A DNA stretch of 64,000 nt from positions 62,001 to 126,000 of IMG/VR virus record IMGVR_UViG_3300044641_009805. One strand, 5' to 3'. Shown here piece by piece: positions 16,624 to 57,697 of the stretch. Made by a program: the position numbers and the translations under genes. Positions within the stretch are counted from its first letter, which is position 1; each line of letters starts with the position of its first letter. Below the pieces are notes generated by a model that saw only the letters and a program-made list of their open reading frames with translations, searched no databases and had not been told where the DNA came from.

Positions 16624-16905
16624 ATGGCAAAGAAAGCAAAGACAAACAAGATCAACGTTGATTCCCCGATTCCTTTTCCTCAGGTGCACACGTTCGATGA
16701 GTTGGCTGTCATCGATGACGATTCATTGAACAACATGCAGCGATCGCTGACGGATTCCATCTCTAGGGTGAATAGTCATGGGTTGAATCCTTCAGCATGG
16801 GAGGTTGAGATGTGTTATGTACAGCGAGAGCTGCAGATTCGAACAGCTCGTCGTGAGGCCCACGCAAAGTATGTTTCGACTGTTTCCGTCACGGAGGAGG
16901 ATTGA
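16624..16905 (+). CDS. Hypothetical protein
   Basis: WEVEMCYVQRELQIR; overlaps the sigma start. Confidence 0.7.
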   Translation: MAKKAKTNKINVDSPIPFPQVHTFDELAVIDDDSLNNMQRSLTDSISRVNSHGLNPSAWEVEMCYVQRELQIRTARREAHAKYVSTVSVTEED

Positions 16906-17735
16906 ATTTGAGTTCTCAAGGCACAATTTCTCGAGAAAACTCTCGAGAGTCAGCCTTCGGCGGCGATTCAATGAATCGCTACTTTTCTTCTCTAAAGAAC
17001 CATCAACAGCTTTCGCATGAGCAGATGATGGAGCTCTTTAAGGTCCTCGAAGCAGGGGGTCTTGACGCGCCTCTCGCGAAGAAAAAGTTGATCGAGACCA
17101 ATCTTCGTTTGGTCGTTTATGTGGCGAAGCAGTACAAGAACCACAGCATGCCTCTCGAAGACATCATTCAAGAAGGCAACATGGGGTTGATGAGAGCGAT
17201 TGAGAAGTTTGATTGGAAGAAGGGATTTAGGTTCTCAACCTACGCGACCTGGTGGGTTAGGCAAGCGATTGGTCAACACATCCTGAAGCAGAAGCGGGTC
17301 ATCAGAATGTCCGCGCATGCCGTGAATACTCAAAAGAAGTTGTTGACAGCCGCCGAAGAATACAGGAACGCGATGGGATGTGAGCCAACTCCTGAAGAGT
17401 TGAAGGAGTTGACAGGCACTTCAGATGCAATCTTCAACGCGATGAGGATCAGTGGTCGATCGATTATTTCGCTTGATCAACCTCTGTCCTCAGATCCAGA
17501 TGCTGACACGATTGAAGATAAGATTGAGGCGGATCCTACGTCAGATCCACTCGAGATTTTTTCTTCCAAGCAAATGTTAGAGTTGGCTCAACGAGTCATC
17601 GTGGGCCTTTCTCCAAAGGAAGCTGCGATTTTGAGGTTACGGTTCGGGCTGGTCGACGACGTGTTGAGCGATGAATCTTATAAGATCACTCAAGAGCAAG
17701 TTGAGAAGATCTCAATGGGAGAAGGTCTCACGTGA
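16902..17735 (+). CDS. Sigma70-family RNA polymerase sigma factor lacking region 4.2 HTH
   Basis: LIETNLRLVVYVAKQY, DIIQEGNMGLMRAIEKFD, GFRFSTYATWWVRQAI, SLDQPL, LSPKEAAILRLRFGL; then ends without a TLEEIG...[9 protein letters not shown]-like segment. Start may be ATG 16971. Confidence 0.93.
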   Translation: MNLSSQGTISRENSRESAFGGDSMNRYFSSLKNHQQLSHEQMMELFKVLEAGGLDAPLAKKKLIETNLRLVVYVAKQYKNHSMPLEDIIQEGNMGLMRAIEKFDWKKGFRFSTYATWWVRQAIGQHILKQKRVIRMSAHAVNTQKKLLTAAEEYRNAMGCEPTPEELKELTGTSDAIFNAMRISGRSIISLDQPLSSDPDADTIEDKIEADPTSDPLEIFSSKQMLELAQRVIVGLSPKEAAILRLRFGLVDDVLSDESYKITQEQVEKISMGEGLT

Positions 17736-17992
17736 CCAGCGAAAGTCTGATTCTTGTCCTATGTTCGATCAATCTGGTCACTTCTTTTGTTAGTTTGTAC
17801 ATGTTGATCCGTGACAAGAAATCTGATGAAATTGAGGAGGAAGAAGACGTAAAAGAAGATCTGCTGGTCGAACGGAACTTAAATTCAAGATTGCGATACT
17901 TGCAGACGACCAGATTTGGTCCATCAATGGTACCTCATTCTAGGGGCGAGACATTTCATAGGAAAAATGACAATGACAATGAAAAAAGGTAG
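17732..17992 (+). CDS. Membrane-anchored hypothetical protein
   Basis: N-terminal TM; GTGA overlap. Confidence 0.65.
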   Translation: MTSESLILVLCSINLVTSFVSLYMLIRDKKSDEIEEEEDVKEDLLVERNLNSRLRYLQTTRFGPSMVPHSRGETFHRKNDNDNEKR

Positions 17993-18281
17993 CAAATTTG
18001 TTGGTGGGTACGCAACAATTGACGATAATGGTGTTAATTATCGTGATATTGCGGATACAATGACAGAGCTTGGGTATAAAATGAACCATTCCTCAGCGAG
18101 GAATTACGTACTTCGAGTCATGCGCAAGTTTGTTGATGCAATAGCAGATCAGCATAACATTCACGTCGATTCTGAATCAGCTGAGATGATTTCGAAATCT
18201 CCGTTGTTCCAAAGTGGAATCTCTGACTTGTTACAAGATCTAGAGTCTCATAGAAAATTGGTGAAAAATGAAAGCAACTAA
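17967..18281 (+). CDS. HTH-like protein (resembles sigma region 4)
   Basis: GVNYRDIADTMTELGYKMNHSSARNYVLRVMRKF. Confidence 0.6.
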   Translation: MTMTMKKGSKFVGGYATIDDNGVNYRDIADTMTELGYKMNHSSARNYVLRVMRKFVDAIADQHNIHVDSESAEMISKSPLFQSGISDLLQDLESHRKLVKNESN

Positions 18282-18696
18282 GTATCAAAAGAAGTCTTTG
18301 ATCAGACTAGAAGATCTTCTTCGTCGCAGAAAGACCACGTTAAAAAAGTTTTTGATTGAGAGAGGTATCACCACCTACAGCGTTCTTGAAGAGACTTGCA
18401 ATAGATTAGGTGTTGTGACTCCTGGTTTCGAAGCATTCAATTTATGCATTCCTTCGTACGTTTCTGATCCAACGGCAGGCGTCGTTGTTGTTCCTCCGTT
18501 AGATGTCGTTGCAGAGGCGACTGGTGAGAAAGAAAATTTGAACGAGGTTTTTGCAGCTATTCCTCCAACTACCGCGTATGAAGACGTTCTGTCTCAAGAA
18601 AATCTTTCTCTCGTCGAAGATGAAGATGGAGATGCATCCAAGCTAGACCCAACATCAGAAACGAAGAATTACCAGAAGAAGAAGTTAAAAAAGTAG
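18268..18696 (+). CDS. Hypothetical protein
   Basis: Coupled ORF in operon. Confidence 0.7.
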   Translation: MKATKYQKKSLIRLEDLLRRRKTTLKKFLIERGITTYSVLEETCNRLGVVTPGFEAFNLCIPSYVSDPTAGVVVVPPLDVVAEATGEKENLNEVFAAIPPTTAYEDVLSQENLSLVEDEDGDASKLDPTSETKNYQKKKLKK

Positions 18697-55921: not shown

Positions 55922-55964
55922 AGCAATAAATTATGTTTGATGTCATTATATGCAACCAAACAAT

Positions 55965-57356
55965 TTACAATATTTGAGAAGCCAATGTAGCAAGTTCGCT
56001 TCTTTCTCCTTTTAGCATAGTAACGTGTCCAGCTATATCATACTCTTTAAATTTTTCAATTGCGTATGTTAAACCGCATGTGTATGCATCAACATGCACA
56101 TTGTCGATCTGTTCAATATCTCCAGTAAGAACTATCTTTGTTCCGTCTCCTACTCTGGTTATGATCGTCTTTAATTCATGCATTGAAAGGTTTTGAGCCT
56201 CATCAATGACTATAAAAGAATTAGGTATAGATCTTCCTCTGATGAAGGTAATCGCTTCAATCTCAATTAACCCTTTTTCTTGCATTAAAGACAAATACGC
56301 ATTGCTATCGGTCTTGTTCCACCCGCTGTCTGCTTTTGTTCCGCCTCTGACTTTTGCTGCGTTACCTCTCTTACTTCCCATTAAGAAATTTAAATTGTCT
56401 TTGATGGGAGATATCCAAGGTTCCATTTTTTCTTGTAAAGTTCCAGGTAAAAATCCGATGTCTTTTCCTACAGGCTGAACTGGCTTTGTTACTATTAATT
56501 TTGAATACCTGGCTACTTCTGGACTTCCTATTCCTTTTAGCTGTTCTAGTGCTGCGGCTAACGCTAACAGGGTTTTTCCGCTTCCGCTTAATCCGACCAA
56601 GGTTAAAAGCTTAACGTCAGGATCAAAAAGCAAATCTAAAGAAAATGCTTGTTCTTTGTTCCTAGGTTTTAACCCAAAGACATTTTCAAACTTCTCGATT
56701 GGAACAAGCGTTTTAACTCCGTCAACAACTTTTAACTTTGTTATTGCTGATTTTACTGTCTTTTCGTTCTCTACGTGCTTGATTATGACGACTTGGTTTG
56801 GATATCTGACTTGAGGAACATCGATTACTAATTTTTCCTGATGATAAAAATTGTCTATTTCATCTTCAGATAGCTCTACAACTTCTACTCCTTTGTAAAA
56901 AGTTTTTGGATCATTAGTAATTCTTAATTTCAAATAATCTTCAGATACTATTCCTAAAGCATCACACTTAATTCTTACGTTAATATCTTTAGAAACCAGT
57001 ATGTAATCTCTTGGTAATCCTAACATTAAGCTTATGATTACGTTGTCTGCCTTCGTTGGATCTAGTTCTACTGGTAGTTTTTCTTTTACAACTGTAGAAT
57101 CAACTGATACTACTCGTAAAATTCCGCCTTCAGGCAATGCAACTCCGTCTATCAAACTATCATTAGATGATCTCATACCATCCAATGTTCTGCTCACGCT
57201 TCTGGCGTTGTGTCCTACTTCATCCATTCTGCTTTTATGGTGGTCTAATTCCTCTAAAACCACCATTGGAATAATGACATCATTATCTTGAAATGAAAAT
57301 ATAGCATTAGGATCGCTTAAAAGAACGTTCGTGTCAAGGACGTATGTTTTTTTCAT
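55965..57356 (-). CDS. phoH: PIN-PhoH (PhoH2-type) ATPase
   Basis: YVLDTNVLL PIN, SKDINVRIK, GLSGSGKT, GFLPG, IRGRS, IDEAQN, GDIEQID. Confidence 0.93.
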   Translation of the reverse strand: MKKTYVLDTNVLLSDPNAIFSFQDNDVIIPMVVLEELDHHKSRMDEVGHNARSVSRTLDGMRSSNDSLIDGVALPEGGILRVVSVDSTVVKEKLPVELDPTKADNVIISLMLGLPRDYILVSKDINVRIKCDALGIVSEDYLKLRITNDPKTFYKGVEVVELSEDEIDNFYHQEKLVIDVPQVRYPNQVVIIKHVENEKTVKSAITKLKVVDGVKTLVPIEKFENVFGLKPRNKEQAFSLDLLFDPDVKLLTLVGLSGSGKTLLALAAALEQLKGIGSPEVARYSKLIVTKPVQPVGKDIGFLPGTLQEKMEPWISPIKDNLNFLMGSKRGNAAKVRGGTKADSGWNKTDSNAYLSLMQEKGLIEIEAITFIRGRSIPNSFIVIDEAQNLSMHELKTIITRVGDGTKIVLTGDIEQIDNVHVDAYTCGLTYAIEKFKEYDIAGHVTMLKGERSELATLASQIL

Positions 57357-57418
57357 GTTGATTTCAATATCTTCTTTGAACAATGTACCTTTTTTGCCTA
57401 AAGTATAAACAAATTCTA

Positions 57419-57697
57419 ATGACAAAAAGCAAAAGTTTACCAATACTAAAACAATCAGCTACTTGCTTTGAGACGCATGCTAAATACAACGTCAACTGCA
57501 ATAAAGACAGCTGCAAAAATTACATGAATGATAAAAATAATCAAAACTGTGTAATCGTTGCAGCTCAAAAAGGACCATATACCCTACAAAATATAGGAAA
57601 AATATATGGATTGACAAGAATGAGAATTTGTCAAATAGAAAAAAACATCATTCAAAAGTTAAAGTTTCAGCTGTTGTTTGATAATGATTTCTTTTGA
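57419..57697 (+). CDS. Stand-alone sigma70 region-4.2 HTH protein with Cys-rich N-terminus
   Basis: YTLQNIGKIYGLTRMRICQIEKNIIQKLK resembles RpoD [17 protein letters not shown]..ALRKL. Confidence 0.8.
   Translation: MTKSKSLPILKQSATCFETHAKYNVNCNKDSCKNYMNDKNNQNCVIVAAQKGPYTLQNIGKIYGLTRMRICQIEKNIIQKLKFQLLFDNDFF

What the first reader, a model, noticed from the sequence alone, without database searches (positions are those of the whole stretch)
16902..57697. Possible split sigma factor: sigma without region 4.2, and region-4.2 HTHs on separate genes
Seen: the sigma at 16902-17735 has regions 2, 3 and 4.1 (LSPKEAAILRLRFGL) but stops about 27 aa later without the -35-reading HTH. The gene at 57419-57697 encodes that missing piece (YTLQNIGKIYGLTRMRICQIE..IIQKLK) behind a Cys-rich domain. 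17967-18281, two genes after the sigma, carries another region-4-like HTH (NYRDIAD...SARNYVLRVMRK). Known: E. coli sigma70 reads -35 through R584/E585/R588 in [9 protein letters not shown]; T4 gp55/gp33 and Bacillus SigO-RsoA are two-part precedents. TRMRICQIE changes two of those residues, predicting altered -35 specificity. Inference: a modular sigma that reads -10-only late promoters alone, or swaps -35 readers in trans.
Basis: partly seen in the sequence, partly recalled or inferred. Interest (0 to 1): 0.75.

Follow-up and report, generated by a model that had tools for sequence, protein, structure and literature searches.

The report
Phage sigma factor split in two
A lineage of uncultured freshwater jumbo phages encodes a primary-type sigma factor that always lacks its last DNA-reading helix, and a separate small zinc-finger-like protein that carries exactly that missing piece, so the two probably work together as a two-part promoter-recognition factor.

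Summary
The main observation holds. The sigma at 16902-17735 has regions 1.2 to 4.1 and ends 27 residues after RLRFGL. More than 120 homologue clusters end at the same point, and three independent assemblies show no indel there, so this is not an assembly error.

The gene at 57419-57697 encodes a 92-aa protein with four invariant Cys and an invariant YGLTRMRICQIEK helix. This is the only Sigma70_r4 match in the 278-kb genome.

In ten full-length sigma models, the sigma match ends within about three positions of where the small protein's match begins. Both genes occur in all three near-complete relatives (91-100%). A controlled complex prediction places the small protein on the sigma's 4.1 helices and tail (ipSAE 0.56, best control 0.00, verdict weak support).

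The gene at 17967-18281 follows the sigma in 80 of 80 loci, but no profile search finds region 4 in it.

The lineage also has a gp55-like late sigma, so "-10-only late promoters" is not the likely role. Instead there are 14-50 stereotyped leaderless promoters per genome (GTGMAA-N18-TAnnnT-N6-ATG). They are absent from outgroup phages that lack the pair.

Verdict: a real, new variant of a split sigma. Binding and promoter assignment are untested.

The parts
16902..17735 (+). Truncated group-1-like sigma factor (277 aa). It has regions 1.2, 2, 3 and 4.1, then a conserved 27-aa tail ending GxGLT. It has no region 4.2 recognition helix.
   Evidence: Pfam r2 and r3 only. PDB and NCBIfam alignments to RpoD/RpoS/SigB stop at residues 251-269. 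121-sequence alignment with a common C-terminus. AF2 model. No indel in three assemblies.
57419..57697 (+). Stand-alone sigma region 4.2 protein (92 aa). It has an N-terminal module with four invariant Cys (C16, C27, C32, C44) and an HTH with invariant YGLTRMRICQIEK.
   Evidence: Pfam Sigma70_r4 at 37.3 bits. PDB hits to SigA/RpoD region 4.2. 244 homologue clusters, all 72-140 aa. Alignments A2 and A4. 680 representatives, no fused form in the best 150.
17967..18281 (+). Conserved 104-aa protein (GYATV..GVNYREIAD..MNHSSARNYVLRVMRKF). It is always downstream of the sigma. HTH-like by eye, but not demonstrably region 4.
   Evidence: Present downstream of the sigma in 80 of 80 related loci at 43-100% identity. 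Alignment A5. No sigma-4 match. Weak language-model lead.
16624..16905 (+). Conserved upstream ORF (about 93 aa from the ATG at 16624). Its stop overlaps the sigma start, so it is probably translationally coupled. Function unknown.
   Evidence: Found upstream of the sigma in most of the 80 loci. No family match.
18268..18696 (+). Conserved 142-aa ORF after the HTH-like gene, part of the same syntenic block. Function unknown.
   Evidence: Present in nearly all 80 loci. No family match.
16548..16575 (+). Promoter-like site in front of the sigma operon: GTGCAA, a 16-nt spacer containing TGg, then TATAAA.
   Evidence: Read in the sequence. GTGCAA(AG)-N-TAnnnT sites lie upstream of the homologous operon in about 20 closer relatives.
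215..13597 (+). Array of at least 18 leaderless class-1 promoters (GTGCAAAGT-N15-G-n-TAnnnT-N6-ATG) driving small ORFs in the GC-rich part of the window. ATGs lie at 250, 5988, 6648, 6962, 7229, 8777, 9683, 10176, 10434, 10793, 11175, 11986, 12268, 12499, 12754, 12989, 13243 and 13595. This is the candidate target class.
   Evidence: 45 sites in the genome against 0 in the reversed-pattern control. Sharp 18-nt spacer. Consensus and information content.
57376..57409 (+). Conserved TTGAACA/TTGTACA(A) element 21-23 nt upstream of a TATAAA box, in front of the small region-4.2 gene. Spacing is longer than a sigma-70 promoter, and the element is partly palindromic in relatives. Role unassigned.

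Best explanation
The phage makes a two-piece sigma-70-family factor.

Piece one (16902-17735) is a primary-type sigma. It carries the core-binding and -10-reading regions (1.2, 2, 3) and the first two helices of domain 4 (region 4.1). It has lost the helix-turn-helix that reads the -35 element.

Piece two (57419-57697) carries that helix-turn-helix behind a four-cysteine, probably zinc-binding, module.

The sigma's conserved 27-residue tail and the small protein's Cys module act as docking pieces. The small protein's HTH then packs on the sigma's 4.1 helices and rebuilds a domain-4-like unit, with the recognition helix TRMRICQIEK free to face DNA.

The assembled factor directs host RNA polymerase to phage promoters with a non-canonical -35 box. 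The best candidate is the abundant leaderless class GTGMAA-N18-TAnnnT-N6-ATG.

Shown: the truncation, its conservation, the domain complementarity, the co-occurrence and the promoter class.

Inferred: physical binding (model only), zinc binding, which promoter class is read, and timing.
For: (1) Conserved truncation. All 120 listed relatives are 236-341 aa (nearly all 254-290) and none has a Pfam r4 annotation. In a 24-sequence alignment all rows end at ...GxGLT, and the 121-sequence consensus ends the same way. Three independent lake-metagenome assemblies show no indel across 17136-18400.

(2) Tiling. In ten full-length NCBIfam sigma models, the sigma match ends within about three positions of where the small protein's match begins. 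Examples: RpoD NF004208 360-585 vs 589-617; SigB NF005920 67-284 vs 286-315; RpoS TIGR02394 6-239 vs 240-274. Against phrog_351 the ranges are 470-711 and 691-725. In relatives, Pfam r4 positions 1-22 match the sigma genes and positions 12-50 match the small genes.

(3) One r2 match and one r4 match in the whole 278-kb genome.

(4) Co-occurrence. The small gene is found in 9 of 14 sigma-bearing records, including every record at least 52% complete and both that are at least 90% complete. In the reverse direction, the 99%-complete record G016 also has the sigma.

(5) Complex prediction with the sigma 21-277 and the small protein: ipSAE 0.59/0.56/0.54, best of three controls 0.00, verdict 'weak support'. 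The tool's calibration: 58 of 80 solved complexes and 2 of 110 mismatched pairs reach the mark, but at 0.60 or under only 7 of the 80 and both mismatches do. The interface is sigma 231-277 against small-protein 13-36, 45-62 and the back face of the last helix (70, 73-74, 76-77, 80-81, 84-85). T66, R67, M68, R69 and Q72 are left free.

(6) The recognition helix is invariant in 121 sequences, and the GTGMAA box is conserved between genomes of about 35-60% and 56% GC. Counts against control: 45/0, 50/2, 26/1, 31/0, 28/0, 18/1, 14/1. The spacer is sharply 18 nt. The canonical TTGACA is not enriched.

(7) T4, RM378, immuto and Mel-JY01 lack both the small protein and the promoter class.

(8) A gp55-like late sigma is present, so late promoters have another reader.
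Against: - The complex score is in the range that the tool calls weak. The model may simply rebuild a sigma domain 4 from memory of solved sigmas.
- The small protein carries its own helix equivalent to the second 4.1 helix (Pfam match starts at model position 12; helix 45-51), so it is not a pure complement.
- The two genes are 40-185 kb apart and are not co-transcribed, unlike SigO-RsoA or Sig7-Sig8.
- Two r4-bearing fragments (60% and 70% complete) show no sigma. They also lack the promoter array that flanks the sigma, which fits incompleteness but does not prove it.
- The sigma operon itself sits behind a GTGCAA-type promoter. This fits better with class 1 being early and read by the host sigma, in which case the pair's target would be another class.
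- Core genes of one phage lineage co-occur anyway, so co-occurrence is weak evidence of partnership.
Confidence: 0.55

Rival explanations
1. The truncated sigma works without any -35 reader, using the -10 box plus the conserved G at -14. The small region-4.2 protein is an independent DNA-binding regulator, or a decoy that competes with the host sigma's region 4 for the beta flap or for -35 boxes. They co-occur only because both are core genes of the lineage.
For: - Class-1 promoters carry a conserved G two bases upstream of TAnnnT (information 1.8 bits), reminiscent of extended -10 promoters, which can dispense with -35 contacts.
- The genes are far apart and have different upstream elements.
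- The small protein has its own extra helix and a Cys module, so it could fold alone.
- A partly palindromic TTGTACAA element lies in front of the small gene in many relatives, as for an autoregulated repressor.
Against: - The class-1 and class-2 promoters have strongly conserved boxes at exactly the -35 position with a fixed spacer, so something reads a -35 box.
- The sigma keeps region 4.1 and a conserved tail that would have no role.
- The predicted interface lies exactly on that 4.1 and tail, with controls at 0.00.
- The end-to-end tiling of sigma models would be a coincidence.
Confidence: 0.22
2. The small region-4.2 protein is the partner of the gp55-like late sigma, a functional analogue of T4 gp33. 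It is not the partner of the RpoD-like sigma.
For: - A gp55-like gene is present in all four genomes tested.
- No gp33 or gp45 homologue was detected, so the late system lacks a known co-activator.
- The small gene lies among late-type structural genes next to PhoH.
Against: - The gp33 and gp45 searches rang nowhere, so they are inconclusive.
- gp33 has no DNA-reading HTH, whereas here the recognition helix is invariant.
- The small protein is closest to group-1 sigma 4.2, the same class as the truncated sigma.
- It is predicted to dock on the truncated sigma's 4.1 remnant.
Confidence: 0.1
3. The true or additional trans-acting partner is the neighbour gene 17967-18281. It supplies a different DNA-reading head, so one sigma core would serve two promoter classes.
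For: - It lies downstream of the sigma in 80 of 80 loci, with conservation equal to the sigma's.
- It has an HTH-like invariant motif, NYREIA..MNHSSARNYVLRVM.
- Language-model neighbours are annotated Sigma70_r4.
- Two -35 types exist at the same register.
Against: - No profile or profile-profile match to region 4.
- The language-model scores of 0.78-0.86 are in the range that shuffled proteins often reach.
- The whole block from the upstream ORF to the ligase is syntenic, so adjacency may only reflect a conserved module.
- No binding test was run.
Confidence: 0.1
4. The truncation is an artefact or a dead gene: an assembly frameshift or a pseudogene.
For: Another frame over the sigma's last 20 codons reads ...LIRSLKSKLRRS, which superficially recalls the ALRKLR end of region 4.2.
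Against: - That frame overlaps the same DNA, so it cannot add to the protein.
- There is no indel in three independent assemblies or in a 95%-similar strain.
- More than 120 homologue clusters down to 50% identity share the C-terminus and a conserved tail.
Confidence: 0.01

Closest known systems
T4 gp55 / gp33 late transcription pair (with the gp45 clamp)
   Same: Phage-encoded. The promoter-melting part and the beta-flap / domain-4-position part are separate polypeptides. The genes are not adjacent. It occurs in a T4-related myovirus; here the portal and terminase are T4-type.
   Different: gp55 is a minimal region-2 protein, and gp33 has no DNA-reading HTH and depends on the sliding clamp. 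Here the large piece is a nearly complete group-1-like sigma (regions 1.2-4.1), and the small piece keeps a bona fide region 4.2 HTH. This lineage also has its own gp55-like gene, so this is a second, separate system.
Bacillus subtilis SigO-RsoA and Tn916 Sig7-Sig8 two-subunit sigma factors
   Same: Two proteins together supply the -10 and -35 reading functions and are both needed for promoter use, as described in bioRxiv 10.64898/2026.10.01.756105 (read).
   Different: Those are ECF-like (regions 2 and 4 only), split between whole domains, and encoded by adjacent genes. Here the break is inside domain 4, between region 4.1 and the 4.2 HTH. The pieces carry extra docking segments (a 27-aa tail and a 4-Cys module), and the genes are 40-185 kb apart.
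Primary and primary-like sigma factors (RpoD, RpoS, SigA, SigB)
   Same: Best sequence and fold matches for both pieces: RpoD E 2e-50 and Z 18 for the sigma, and SigA region 4.2 for the small protein. The region 2.3/2.4 aromatic and Q residues are invariant.
   Different: No region 1.1 or non-conserved region, and no region 4.2 in the same chain. The recognition helix is TRMRICQIEK instead of [10 protein letters not shown].
Stand-alone Sigma70_r4 small HTH proteins of phages
   Same: Small viral proteins with a Pfam Sigma70_r4 match.
   Different: This family has an invariant 4-Cys module and a 13-residue invariant recognition segment. It co-occurs with a sigma that lacks exactly that segment. 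It has no match in 50,697 GenBank phage records.

Membership tests
Sigma-70 family, group 1/2-like (for 16902-17735) | Region 2 (core binding, -10 recognition and melting) | tested here: met
   Pfam Sigma70_r2 at 80 bits, E 1e-22. Invariant Y114, W117, W118 and Q121.
Sigma-70 family, group 1/2-like (for 16902-17735) | Region 3 | tested here: inconclusive
   Pfam Sigma70_r3 at 23.4 bits, just under the 25.3 cutoff. RpoD, RpoS and SigB models and PDB chains align straight through it, and many relatives carry the Pfam r3 annotation.
Sigma-70 family, group 1/2-like (for 16902-17735) | Region 4.1 helices | tested here: met
   LSPKEAAILRLRFGL is conserved. Pfam r4 positions 1-22 match the sigma genes of relatives. 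AF2 helices at 216-235 and 238-248.
Sigma-70 family, group 1/2-like (for 16902-17735) | Region 4.2 helix-turn-helix that reads -35 | tested here: not met
   No Pfam r4 match. NCBIfam models end at residues 251-254. Only a short helix at 264-271 before the stop. Basic contact residues are replaced in the one alignment that reaches further.
Sigma-70 family, group 1 (primary) | Region 1.1 and full length | tested here: not met
   The alignment to E. coli RpoD begins at RpoD residue 347. The protein is 277 aa.
Pfam Sigma70_r4 (for 57419-57697) | Match above the curated cutoff | tested here: met
   37.3 bits against a cutoff of 24.1, model positions 12-49. 38.1 bits in the genome scan.
Two-subunit (split) sigma factors | Two polypeptides that together make up the -10-reading and -35-reading parts of one sigma | tested here: met
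   End-to-end tiling of ten full-length sigma models and of phrog_351.
Two-subunit (split) sigma factors | The two subunits bind each other and/or RNA polymerase | tested here: inconclusive
   Complex prediction ipSAE 0.56 against best control 0.00, verdict 'weak support'. No experiment, and RNA polymerase was not modelled.
Two-subunit (split) sigma factors | Both subunits are required for transcription from a cognate promoter | not testable with these tools
   Needs in vitro transcription or genetics. Only candidate promoter classes were found.
Two-subunit (split) sigma factors | Genes adjacent or co-transcribed (as in SigO-RsoA and Sig7-Sig8; not so in T4) | tested here: not met
   39.7 kb apart in the window, and about 40-185 kb apart in relatives.
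T4 gp33-type co-activator (for 57419-57697) | Sequence membership in the gp33 family (phrog_254) | tested here: not met
   The PHROG scan of the small protein returns only phrog_351. phrog_254 finds nothing in four genomes, but that search rang nowhere, so it is weak.
Zinc-binding anti-sigma (ZAS) domain (for 57419-57697) | H-x3-C-x2-C motif | tested here: not met
   The invariant Cys are spaced C-x10-C-x4-C-x11-C. There is no HxxxCxxC.
Sigma region 4 (for 17967-18281) | Profile match to Sigma70_r4, r4_2 or a solved sigma domain 4 | tested here: not met
   No Pfam or NCBIfam match. A 44-sequence profile against PDB gave SigR only at E 0.4. hhalign to the small-protein family gave probability 0.85%.

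The most novel reading that the evidence does not exclude
One sigma core with exchangeable -35-reading heads. The truncated sigma docks either the Cys-module region-4.2 protein or the neighbour HTH-like protein (17967-18281). In this way it switches between the two leaderless promoter classes (GTGMAA and YTGWAC) during infection. This would be a natural modular sigma, split inside domain 4 and held together by dedicated docking segments.
Probability: 0.1. Interest if true: 0.85.

Novelty: new variant of a known kind. Interest (0 to 1): 0.66.

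Why it matters
Split sigma factors are known (T4 gp55/gp33, SPO1, SigO-RsoA, Tn916 Sig7-Sig8), but they divide between whole domains. Here a primary-type sigma is cut inside domain 4, between region 4.1 and the -35-reading helix-turn-helix. Both halves have gained conserved extra segments that are predicted to hold them together.

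If confirmed, this would:
- show that sigma domain 4 can be assembled from two chains;
- give a natural, widespread example (hundreds of sequence clusters in lake metagenomes) of trans-supplied -35 recognition;
- define a new -35 specificity tied to an invariant recognition helix;
- offer a ready-made two-input part for synthetic transcription circuits.

It would also explain how a whole lineage of uncultured freshwater jumbo phages redirects host RNA polymerase to dozens of stereotyped leaderless promoters.

Tried and rejected
- Frameshift or assembly error at 17660-17735: rejected. Contigs from three DNA runs of different studies, and from a 95%-similar strain, show no indel there. The only indel is a 1-nt change in an A-run at 16617.
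- An alternative frame that reads LIRSLKSKLRRS: it overlaps the same DNA and cannot extend the protein.
- Region 4.2 encoded just downstream, as an intron or second exon: the next ORF (17732-17992) is a membrane-like peptide conserved only in close relatives.
- Fused 'Rosetta stone' forms: none among the best 150 of 680 representatives.
- GenBank phages: neither small protein has a match in 50,697 records.
- Foldseek search of the small-protein model against PDB: no match. The model's pTM is 0.39, and DSSP merges the HTH into one helix, so the monomer model does not settle the fold.
- Sigma-4 homology of 17967-18281: no support from profile searches.
- gp33 and gp45 PHROG searches: nothing found anywhere, so uninformative.
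- Reading -35 specificity from the E585M and R588C changes: no defensible mapping onto GTGMAA or YTGWAC.
- Treating the element upstream of the small gene as a class-2 promoter: its spacing to the TATA box is 21-23 nt, so I left it unassigned.
- RNA evidence: the only 'RNA' run that holds the region is probably DNA, and only as a relative.
- Literature searches for a described sigma of this kind found none.

Full report
**Setting**

The window is bases 62001-126000 of a 278-kb linear virus record, 84% complete by CheckV. It encodes a T4-type portal (31094-33082, minus strand) and a large terminase (33496-35139, minus strand).

By portal protein, the nearest cultured relatives are only about 40% identical: Microcystis phage Mel-JY01, Flavobacterium phage immuto and Rhodothermus phage RM378. 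The sigma-operon DNA is held almost word for word in at least 17 lake and freshwater metagenome runs, spanning 16 study codes. This is therefore an uncultured freshwater jumbo myovirus. It may belong to, or lie near, the 'moraphage' lineage described from metagenomes (PMC12619734). That paper lists a sigma factor among core genes and does not mention any split. I did not verify membership.

**The sigma**

ORF 16902-17735 (277 aa) matches Sigma70_r2 (E 1e-22) and Sigma70_r3 (E 6e-5, just under the curated cutoff) but not Sigma70_r4. phmmer against PDB aligns residues 28-269 to E. coli RpoD 347-589 at E 4e-47. The AlphaFold2 model matches holoenzyme-bound sigma-70, sigma-S and SigA with Z about 18.

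After the 4.1 helices (216-235 and 238-248, LSPKEAAILRLRFGL) there are only 27 more residues. These form one short helix (264-271) and a terminal GEGLT.

HMMER pairs ITQEQVEK with VTRERIRQ of RpoD. By eye, TQEQVEKIS...GLT can equally be paired with TLEEVGKQF.VT, the first HTH helix. Either way, the arginines that contact DNA are absent and the C-terminal 23 or so residues of a normal sigma are missing.

**Is the truncation real?**

Yes, on three grounds:
- All 120 listed relatives (50-97% identity) are 236-341 aa (nearly all 254-290), and none carries a Pfam r4 annotation.
- In a 24-sequence alignment every row stops at the same column, after a conserved tail SYxITxEE...GxGLT. The 121-sequence consensus ends the same way.
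- Contigs from three DNA runs of different studies cover 17136-18400 with no indel. A 95%-similar strain keeps the frame as well.

**The small protein**

ORF 57419-57697 (92 aa) matches Sigma70_r4 at 37.3 bits, model positions 12-49. Its best PDB matches are all region 4.2 of group-1 sigmas. For example, GPYTLQNIGKIYGLTRMRICQIEKNIIQKLKF aligns with Mycobacterium SigA [32 protein letters not shown].

The family has 244 clusters at 90% identity, all 72-140 aa. At 50% identity there are 680 representatives, 106 of them at E 1e-10 or better. No fused long form appears among the best 150.

Four Cys (C16, C27, C32, C44; spacing C-x10-C-x4-C-x11-C) are invariant in 121 sequences, as is the segment TRMRICQIEK. 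The preceding YGL is nearly invariant. Zinc binding is an inference from this pattern.

The gene is transcribed divergently from the PIN-PhoH gene in 66 of 69 related loci.

**Complementarity**

This is the strongest sequence evidence. The same full-length sigma models are matched by the two proteins end to end:

| Model | Sigma match | Small-protein match |
|---|---|---|
| RpoD NF004208 | 360-585 | 589-617 |
| NF004561 | 279-494 | 494-524 |
| NF004560 | 275-472 | 474-503 |
| SigB NF005920 | 67-284 | 286-315 |
| RpoD_Cterm TIGR02393 | 1-195 | 193-226 |
| RpoS TIGR02394 | 6-239 | 240-274 |

Four further models behave the same way. phrog_351 gives 470-711 and 691-725.

The break therefore lies inside domain 4, between the second 4.1 helix and the first helix of the HTH. 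The parts that match nothing are the sigma's tail (255-277) and the small protein's first 50 residues. The whole genome has exactly one r2 match and one r4 match.

**Co-occurrence**

Among 14 long records that carry the sigma, 9 carry the small gene. These include every record at least 52% complete and both that are at least 90% complete. The five without it are 20-44% complete.

Among 14 long records that carry the small gene, the sigma is found in the 99%-complete record, in one 57%-complete record, and partially in one more (a match to region 2 only). Two fragments of 60% and 70% lack it. Those two fragments also lack the promoter array that flanks the sigma operon in every other genome, so their missing part plausibly holds both.

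Neither small protein occurs in 50,697 GenBank phage records. As core genes of one lineage the two would co-occur anyway, so this evidence is permissive rather than decisive.

**Predicted complex**

Sigma residues 21-277 and the small protein, each supplied with a family alignment, gave ipSAE 0.59, 0.56 and 0.54. All three controls (two unrelated partners and one unrelated receptor) scored 0.00. The tool's verdict is 'weak support'. In its calibration, 58 of 80 solved complexes and 2 of 110 mismatched pairs reach the mark. At scores of 0.60 or under, only 7 of those 80 and both mismatches do.

The interface is informative:
- On the sigma: residues 231-251 (region 4.1) and 254-277 (the tail).
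- On the small protein: 13-36 (the Cys module), 45-62, and the hydrophobic back of the last helix (70, 73-74, 76-77, 80-81, 84-85).
- T66, R67, M68, R69 and Q72 are left out of the interface.

This is the geometry expected if region 4.1 packs on the HTH as in an intact sigma, the two novel segments clasp each other, and the recognition face stays free.

Two caveats apply. The model may reproduce the known intramolecular packing of sigma domain 4 from memory. The monomer model of the small protein is poor (pTM 0.39).

**The third gene**

ORF 17967-18281 lies downstream of the sigma in 80 of 80 related loci at 43-100% identity, together with the upstream ORF (16624-16905) and the 142-aa ORF (18268-18696). 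Its invariant core, GVNYREIAD..MNHSSARNYVLRVMRKF, looks like an HTH.

However, Pfam, NCBIfam, a 44-sequence profile against PDB, and hhalign against the small-protein family all give nothing. Only language-model neighbours annotated Sigma70_r4 at 0.78-0.86 point that way, and this is below the tool's reliability mark. It is a plausible second accessory factor but not a demonstrated region 4.

**What does the pair read?**

All four genomes tested, three of them at least 91% complete, have a gp55-like late sigma (phrog_234, E 3e-9 to 3e-6). In this genome it lies at 146531-147316, outside the window.

The motif ATANTTA is more than ten-fold concentrated in intergenic DNA: 69 of 130 sites fall in 6.5% of the genome. 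It sits 6-54 nt before starts with nothing conserved upstream. This resembles T4 late promoters.

An unbiased count of hexamers 17-18 nt upstream of TAnnnT shows GTGCAA/GTGAAA enriched 10-20 fold in two distant genomes. TTGACA is not enriched.

The full pattern GTGMAA-N17-19-TAnnnT-N5-7-ATG occurs as follows:

| Genome | Sites | Reversed-pattern control |
|---|---|---|
| G000 (this genome) | 45 | 0 |
| G005 | 50 | 2 |
| G008 | 31 | 0 |
| G001 | 28 | 0 |
| G016 | 26 | 1 |
| G010 | 18 | 1 |
| G003 | 14 | 1 |

The spacer is sharply 18 nt: 43 of the sites in G000 and 41 in G005. The ATG sits six bases after the -10 box, so the transcripts should be leaderless. There is also a conserved G at -14.

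Within the window at least 18 such promoters drive small ORFs between 215 and 13597. A smaller class with YTGWAC at the same register (8-11 sites per genome, controls 0-2) precedes larger ORFs.

T4, RM378, immuto and Mel-JY01 have neither the small protein nor the class-1 pattern.

**Which class is the target?**

In favour of class 1: the GTGMAA box is conserved across genomes of very different GC content (G005 is 56% GC overall; the low-GC bulk of this window is 30-40%). This parallels the invariance of the recognition helix and argues for a phage-encoded reader.

Against class 1: the sigma operon itself sits behind a GTGCAA-N16-TATAAA site (16548-16575). About 20 closer relatives have a class-1 site there. 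If class 1 needed the phage sigma, its first expression would need another route. The simple alternative is that class 1 is early and host-read, and that the pair serves class 2 or another set.

I cannot decide this without expression or biochemical data.

**Comparison and verdict**

Two-subunit sigmas are established: T4 gp55/gp33, SPO1 gp33/gp34, SigO-RsoA and Tn916 Sig7-Sig8 (summarised in bioRxiv 10.64898/2026.10.01.756105). The present system works like them in principle but differs in four ways:
- The large piece is a nearly complete primary-type sigma.
- The cut lies inside domain 4.
- Both pieces carry dedicated extra segments.
- The genes are far apart.

Searches of the paper library found no description of it.

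I rate it a new variant of a known kind. Confidence is 0.55 that the two proteins form one functional sigma. Interest is 0.66.

Noticed in passing
window 1-16000 against 18000-64000: Strong GC heterogeneity within one phage genome: 51-62% GC in the first 16 kb against about 30-49% in the rest. The GC-rich part coincides with the array of small leaderless class-1 ORFs. In the distant relative G005 the array region is also richer (0.61-0.64 against about 0.55). It is not a chimeric join, because close relatives share the junction (UvdE to sigma).
   Followed up: partly
G000:C1:146531-147316 (outside the window; locus L207:1375-2160): A gp55-like late sigma of 262 aa (T4 gp55 is 185 aa) with a C-terminal extension ending ...LSGLSPKQLTTSIQSIKKHYNKLK. 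No gp33 or gp45 homologues were detected in four genomes, but those searches rang nowhere.
   Followed up: partly
whole genome, e.g. window 20392, 23419, 24349, 29105, 35549: ATANTTA boxes are more than 10-fold enriched in intergenic DNA (69 of 130 sites). They lie 6-54 nt upstream of starts with no conserved -35. These are probably the late promoter class.
   Followed up: partly
window 15605-16540: A UV-damage endonuclease (UvdE-like) gene lies immediately upstream of the sigma operon. It is conserved there in the closer relatives at 55-100% identity.
   Followed up: no
window 55965-57697 and loci L103-L182: The small region-4.2 gene is divergently paired with the PIN-PhoH gene in 66 of 69 loci. 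A conserved TTGAACA/TTGTACA(A) element, partly palindromic, lies 21-23 nt upstream of a TATA box in the shared intergenic region.
   Followed up: partly
L031:5407-6462: In one relative, the HTH-like neighbour gene and the following 142-aa gene read as a single 352-aa ORF. This could be a fusion, a read-through or a sequencing error.
   Followed up: no
window 143-217 and 215-250: tRNA-Arg(CCT) is followed directly by a class-1 promoter whose GTGCAAAG box starts at the tRNA's 3' end. A second tRNA (Glu, TTC) lies at 20717-20789.
   Followed up: no
protein P0360: A 508-aa representative matches the small-protein profile in seven separate stretches. It is either a tandem array of the module or a miscalled region.
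   Followed up: no
window 16617: One lake assembly (run X8) lacks one base in the A-run just upstream of the ATG of the ORF preceding the sigma. This is the only indel seen in 15400-18400.
   Followed up: no
G000 genome 253-278 kb (outside the window): A subtype of the class-1 promoter, GTGAAAnnCCC...ATGATAnnnT, has a clear TG extended -10. It is clustered at the far end of the record and is also found at the start of the close relative G001.
   Followed up: no
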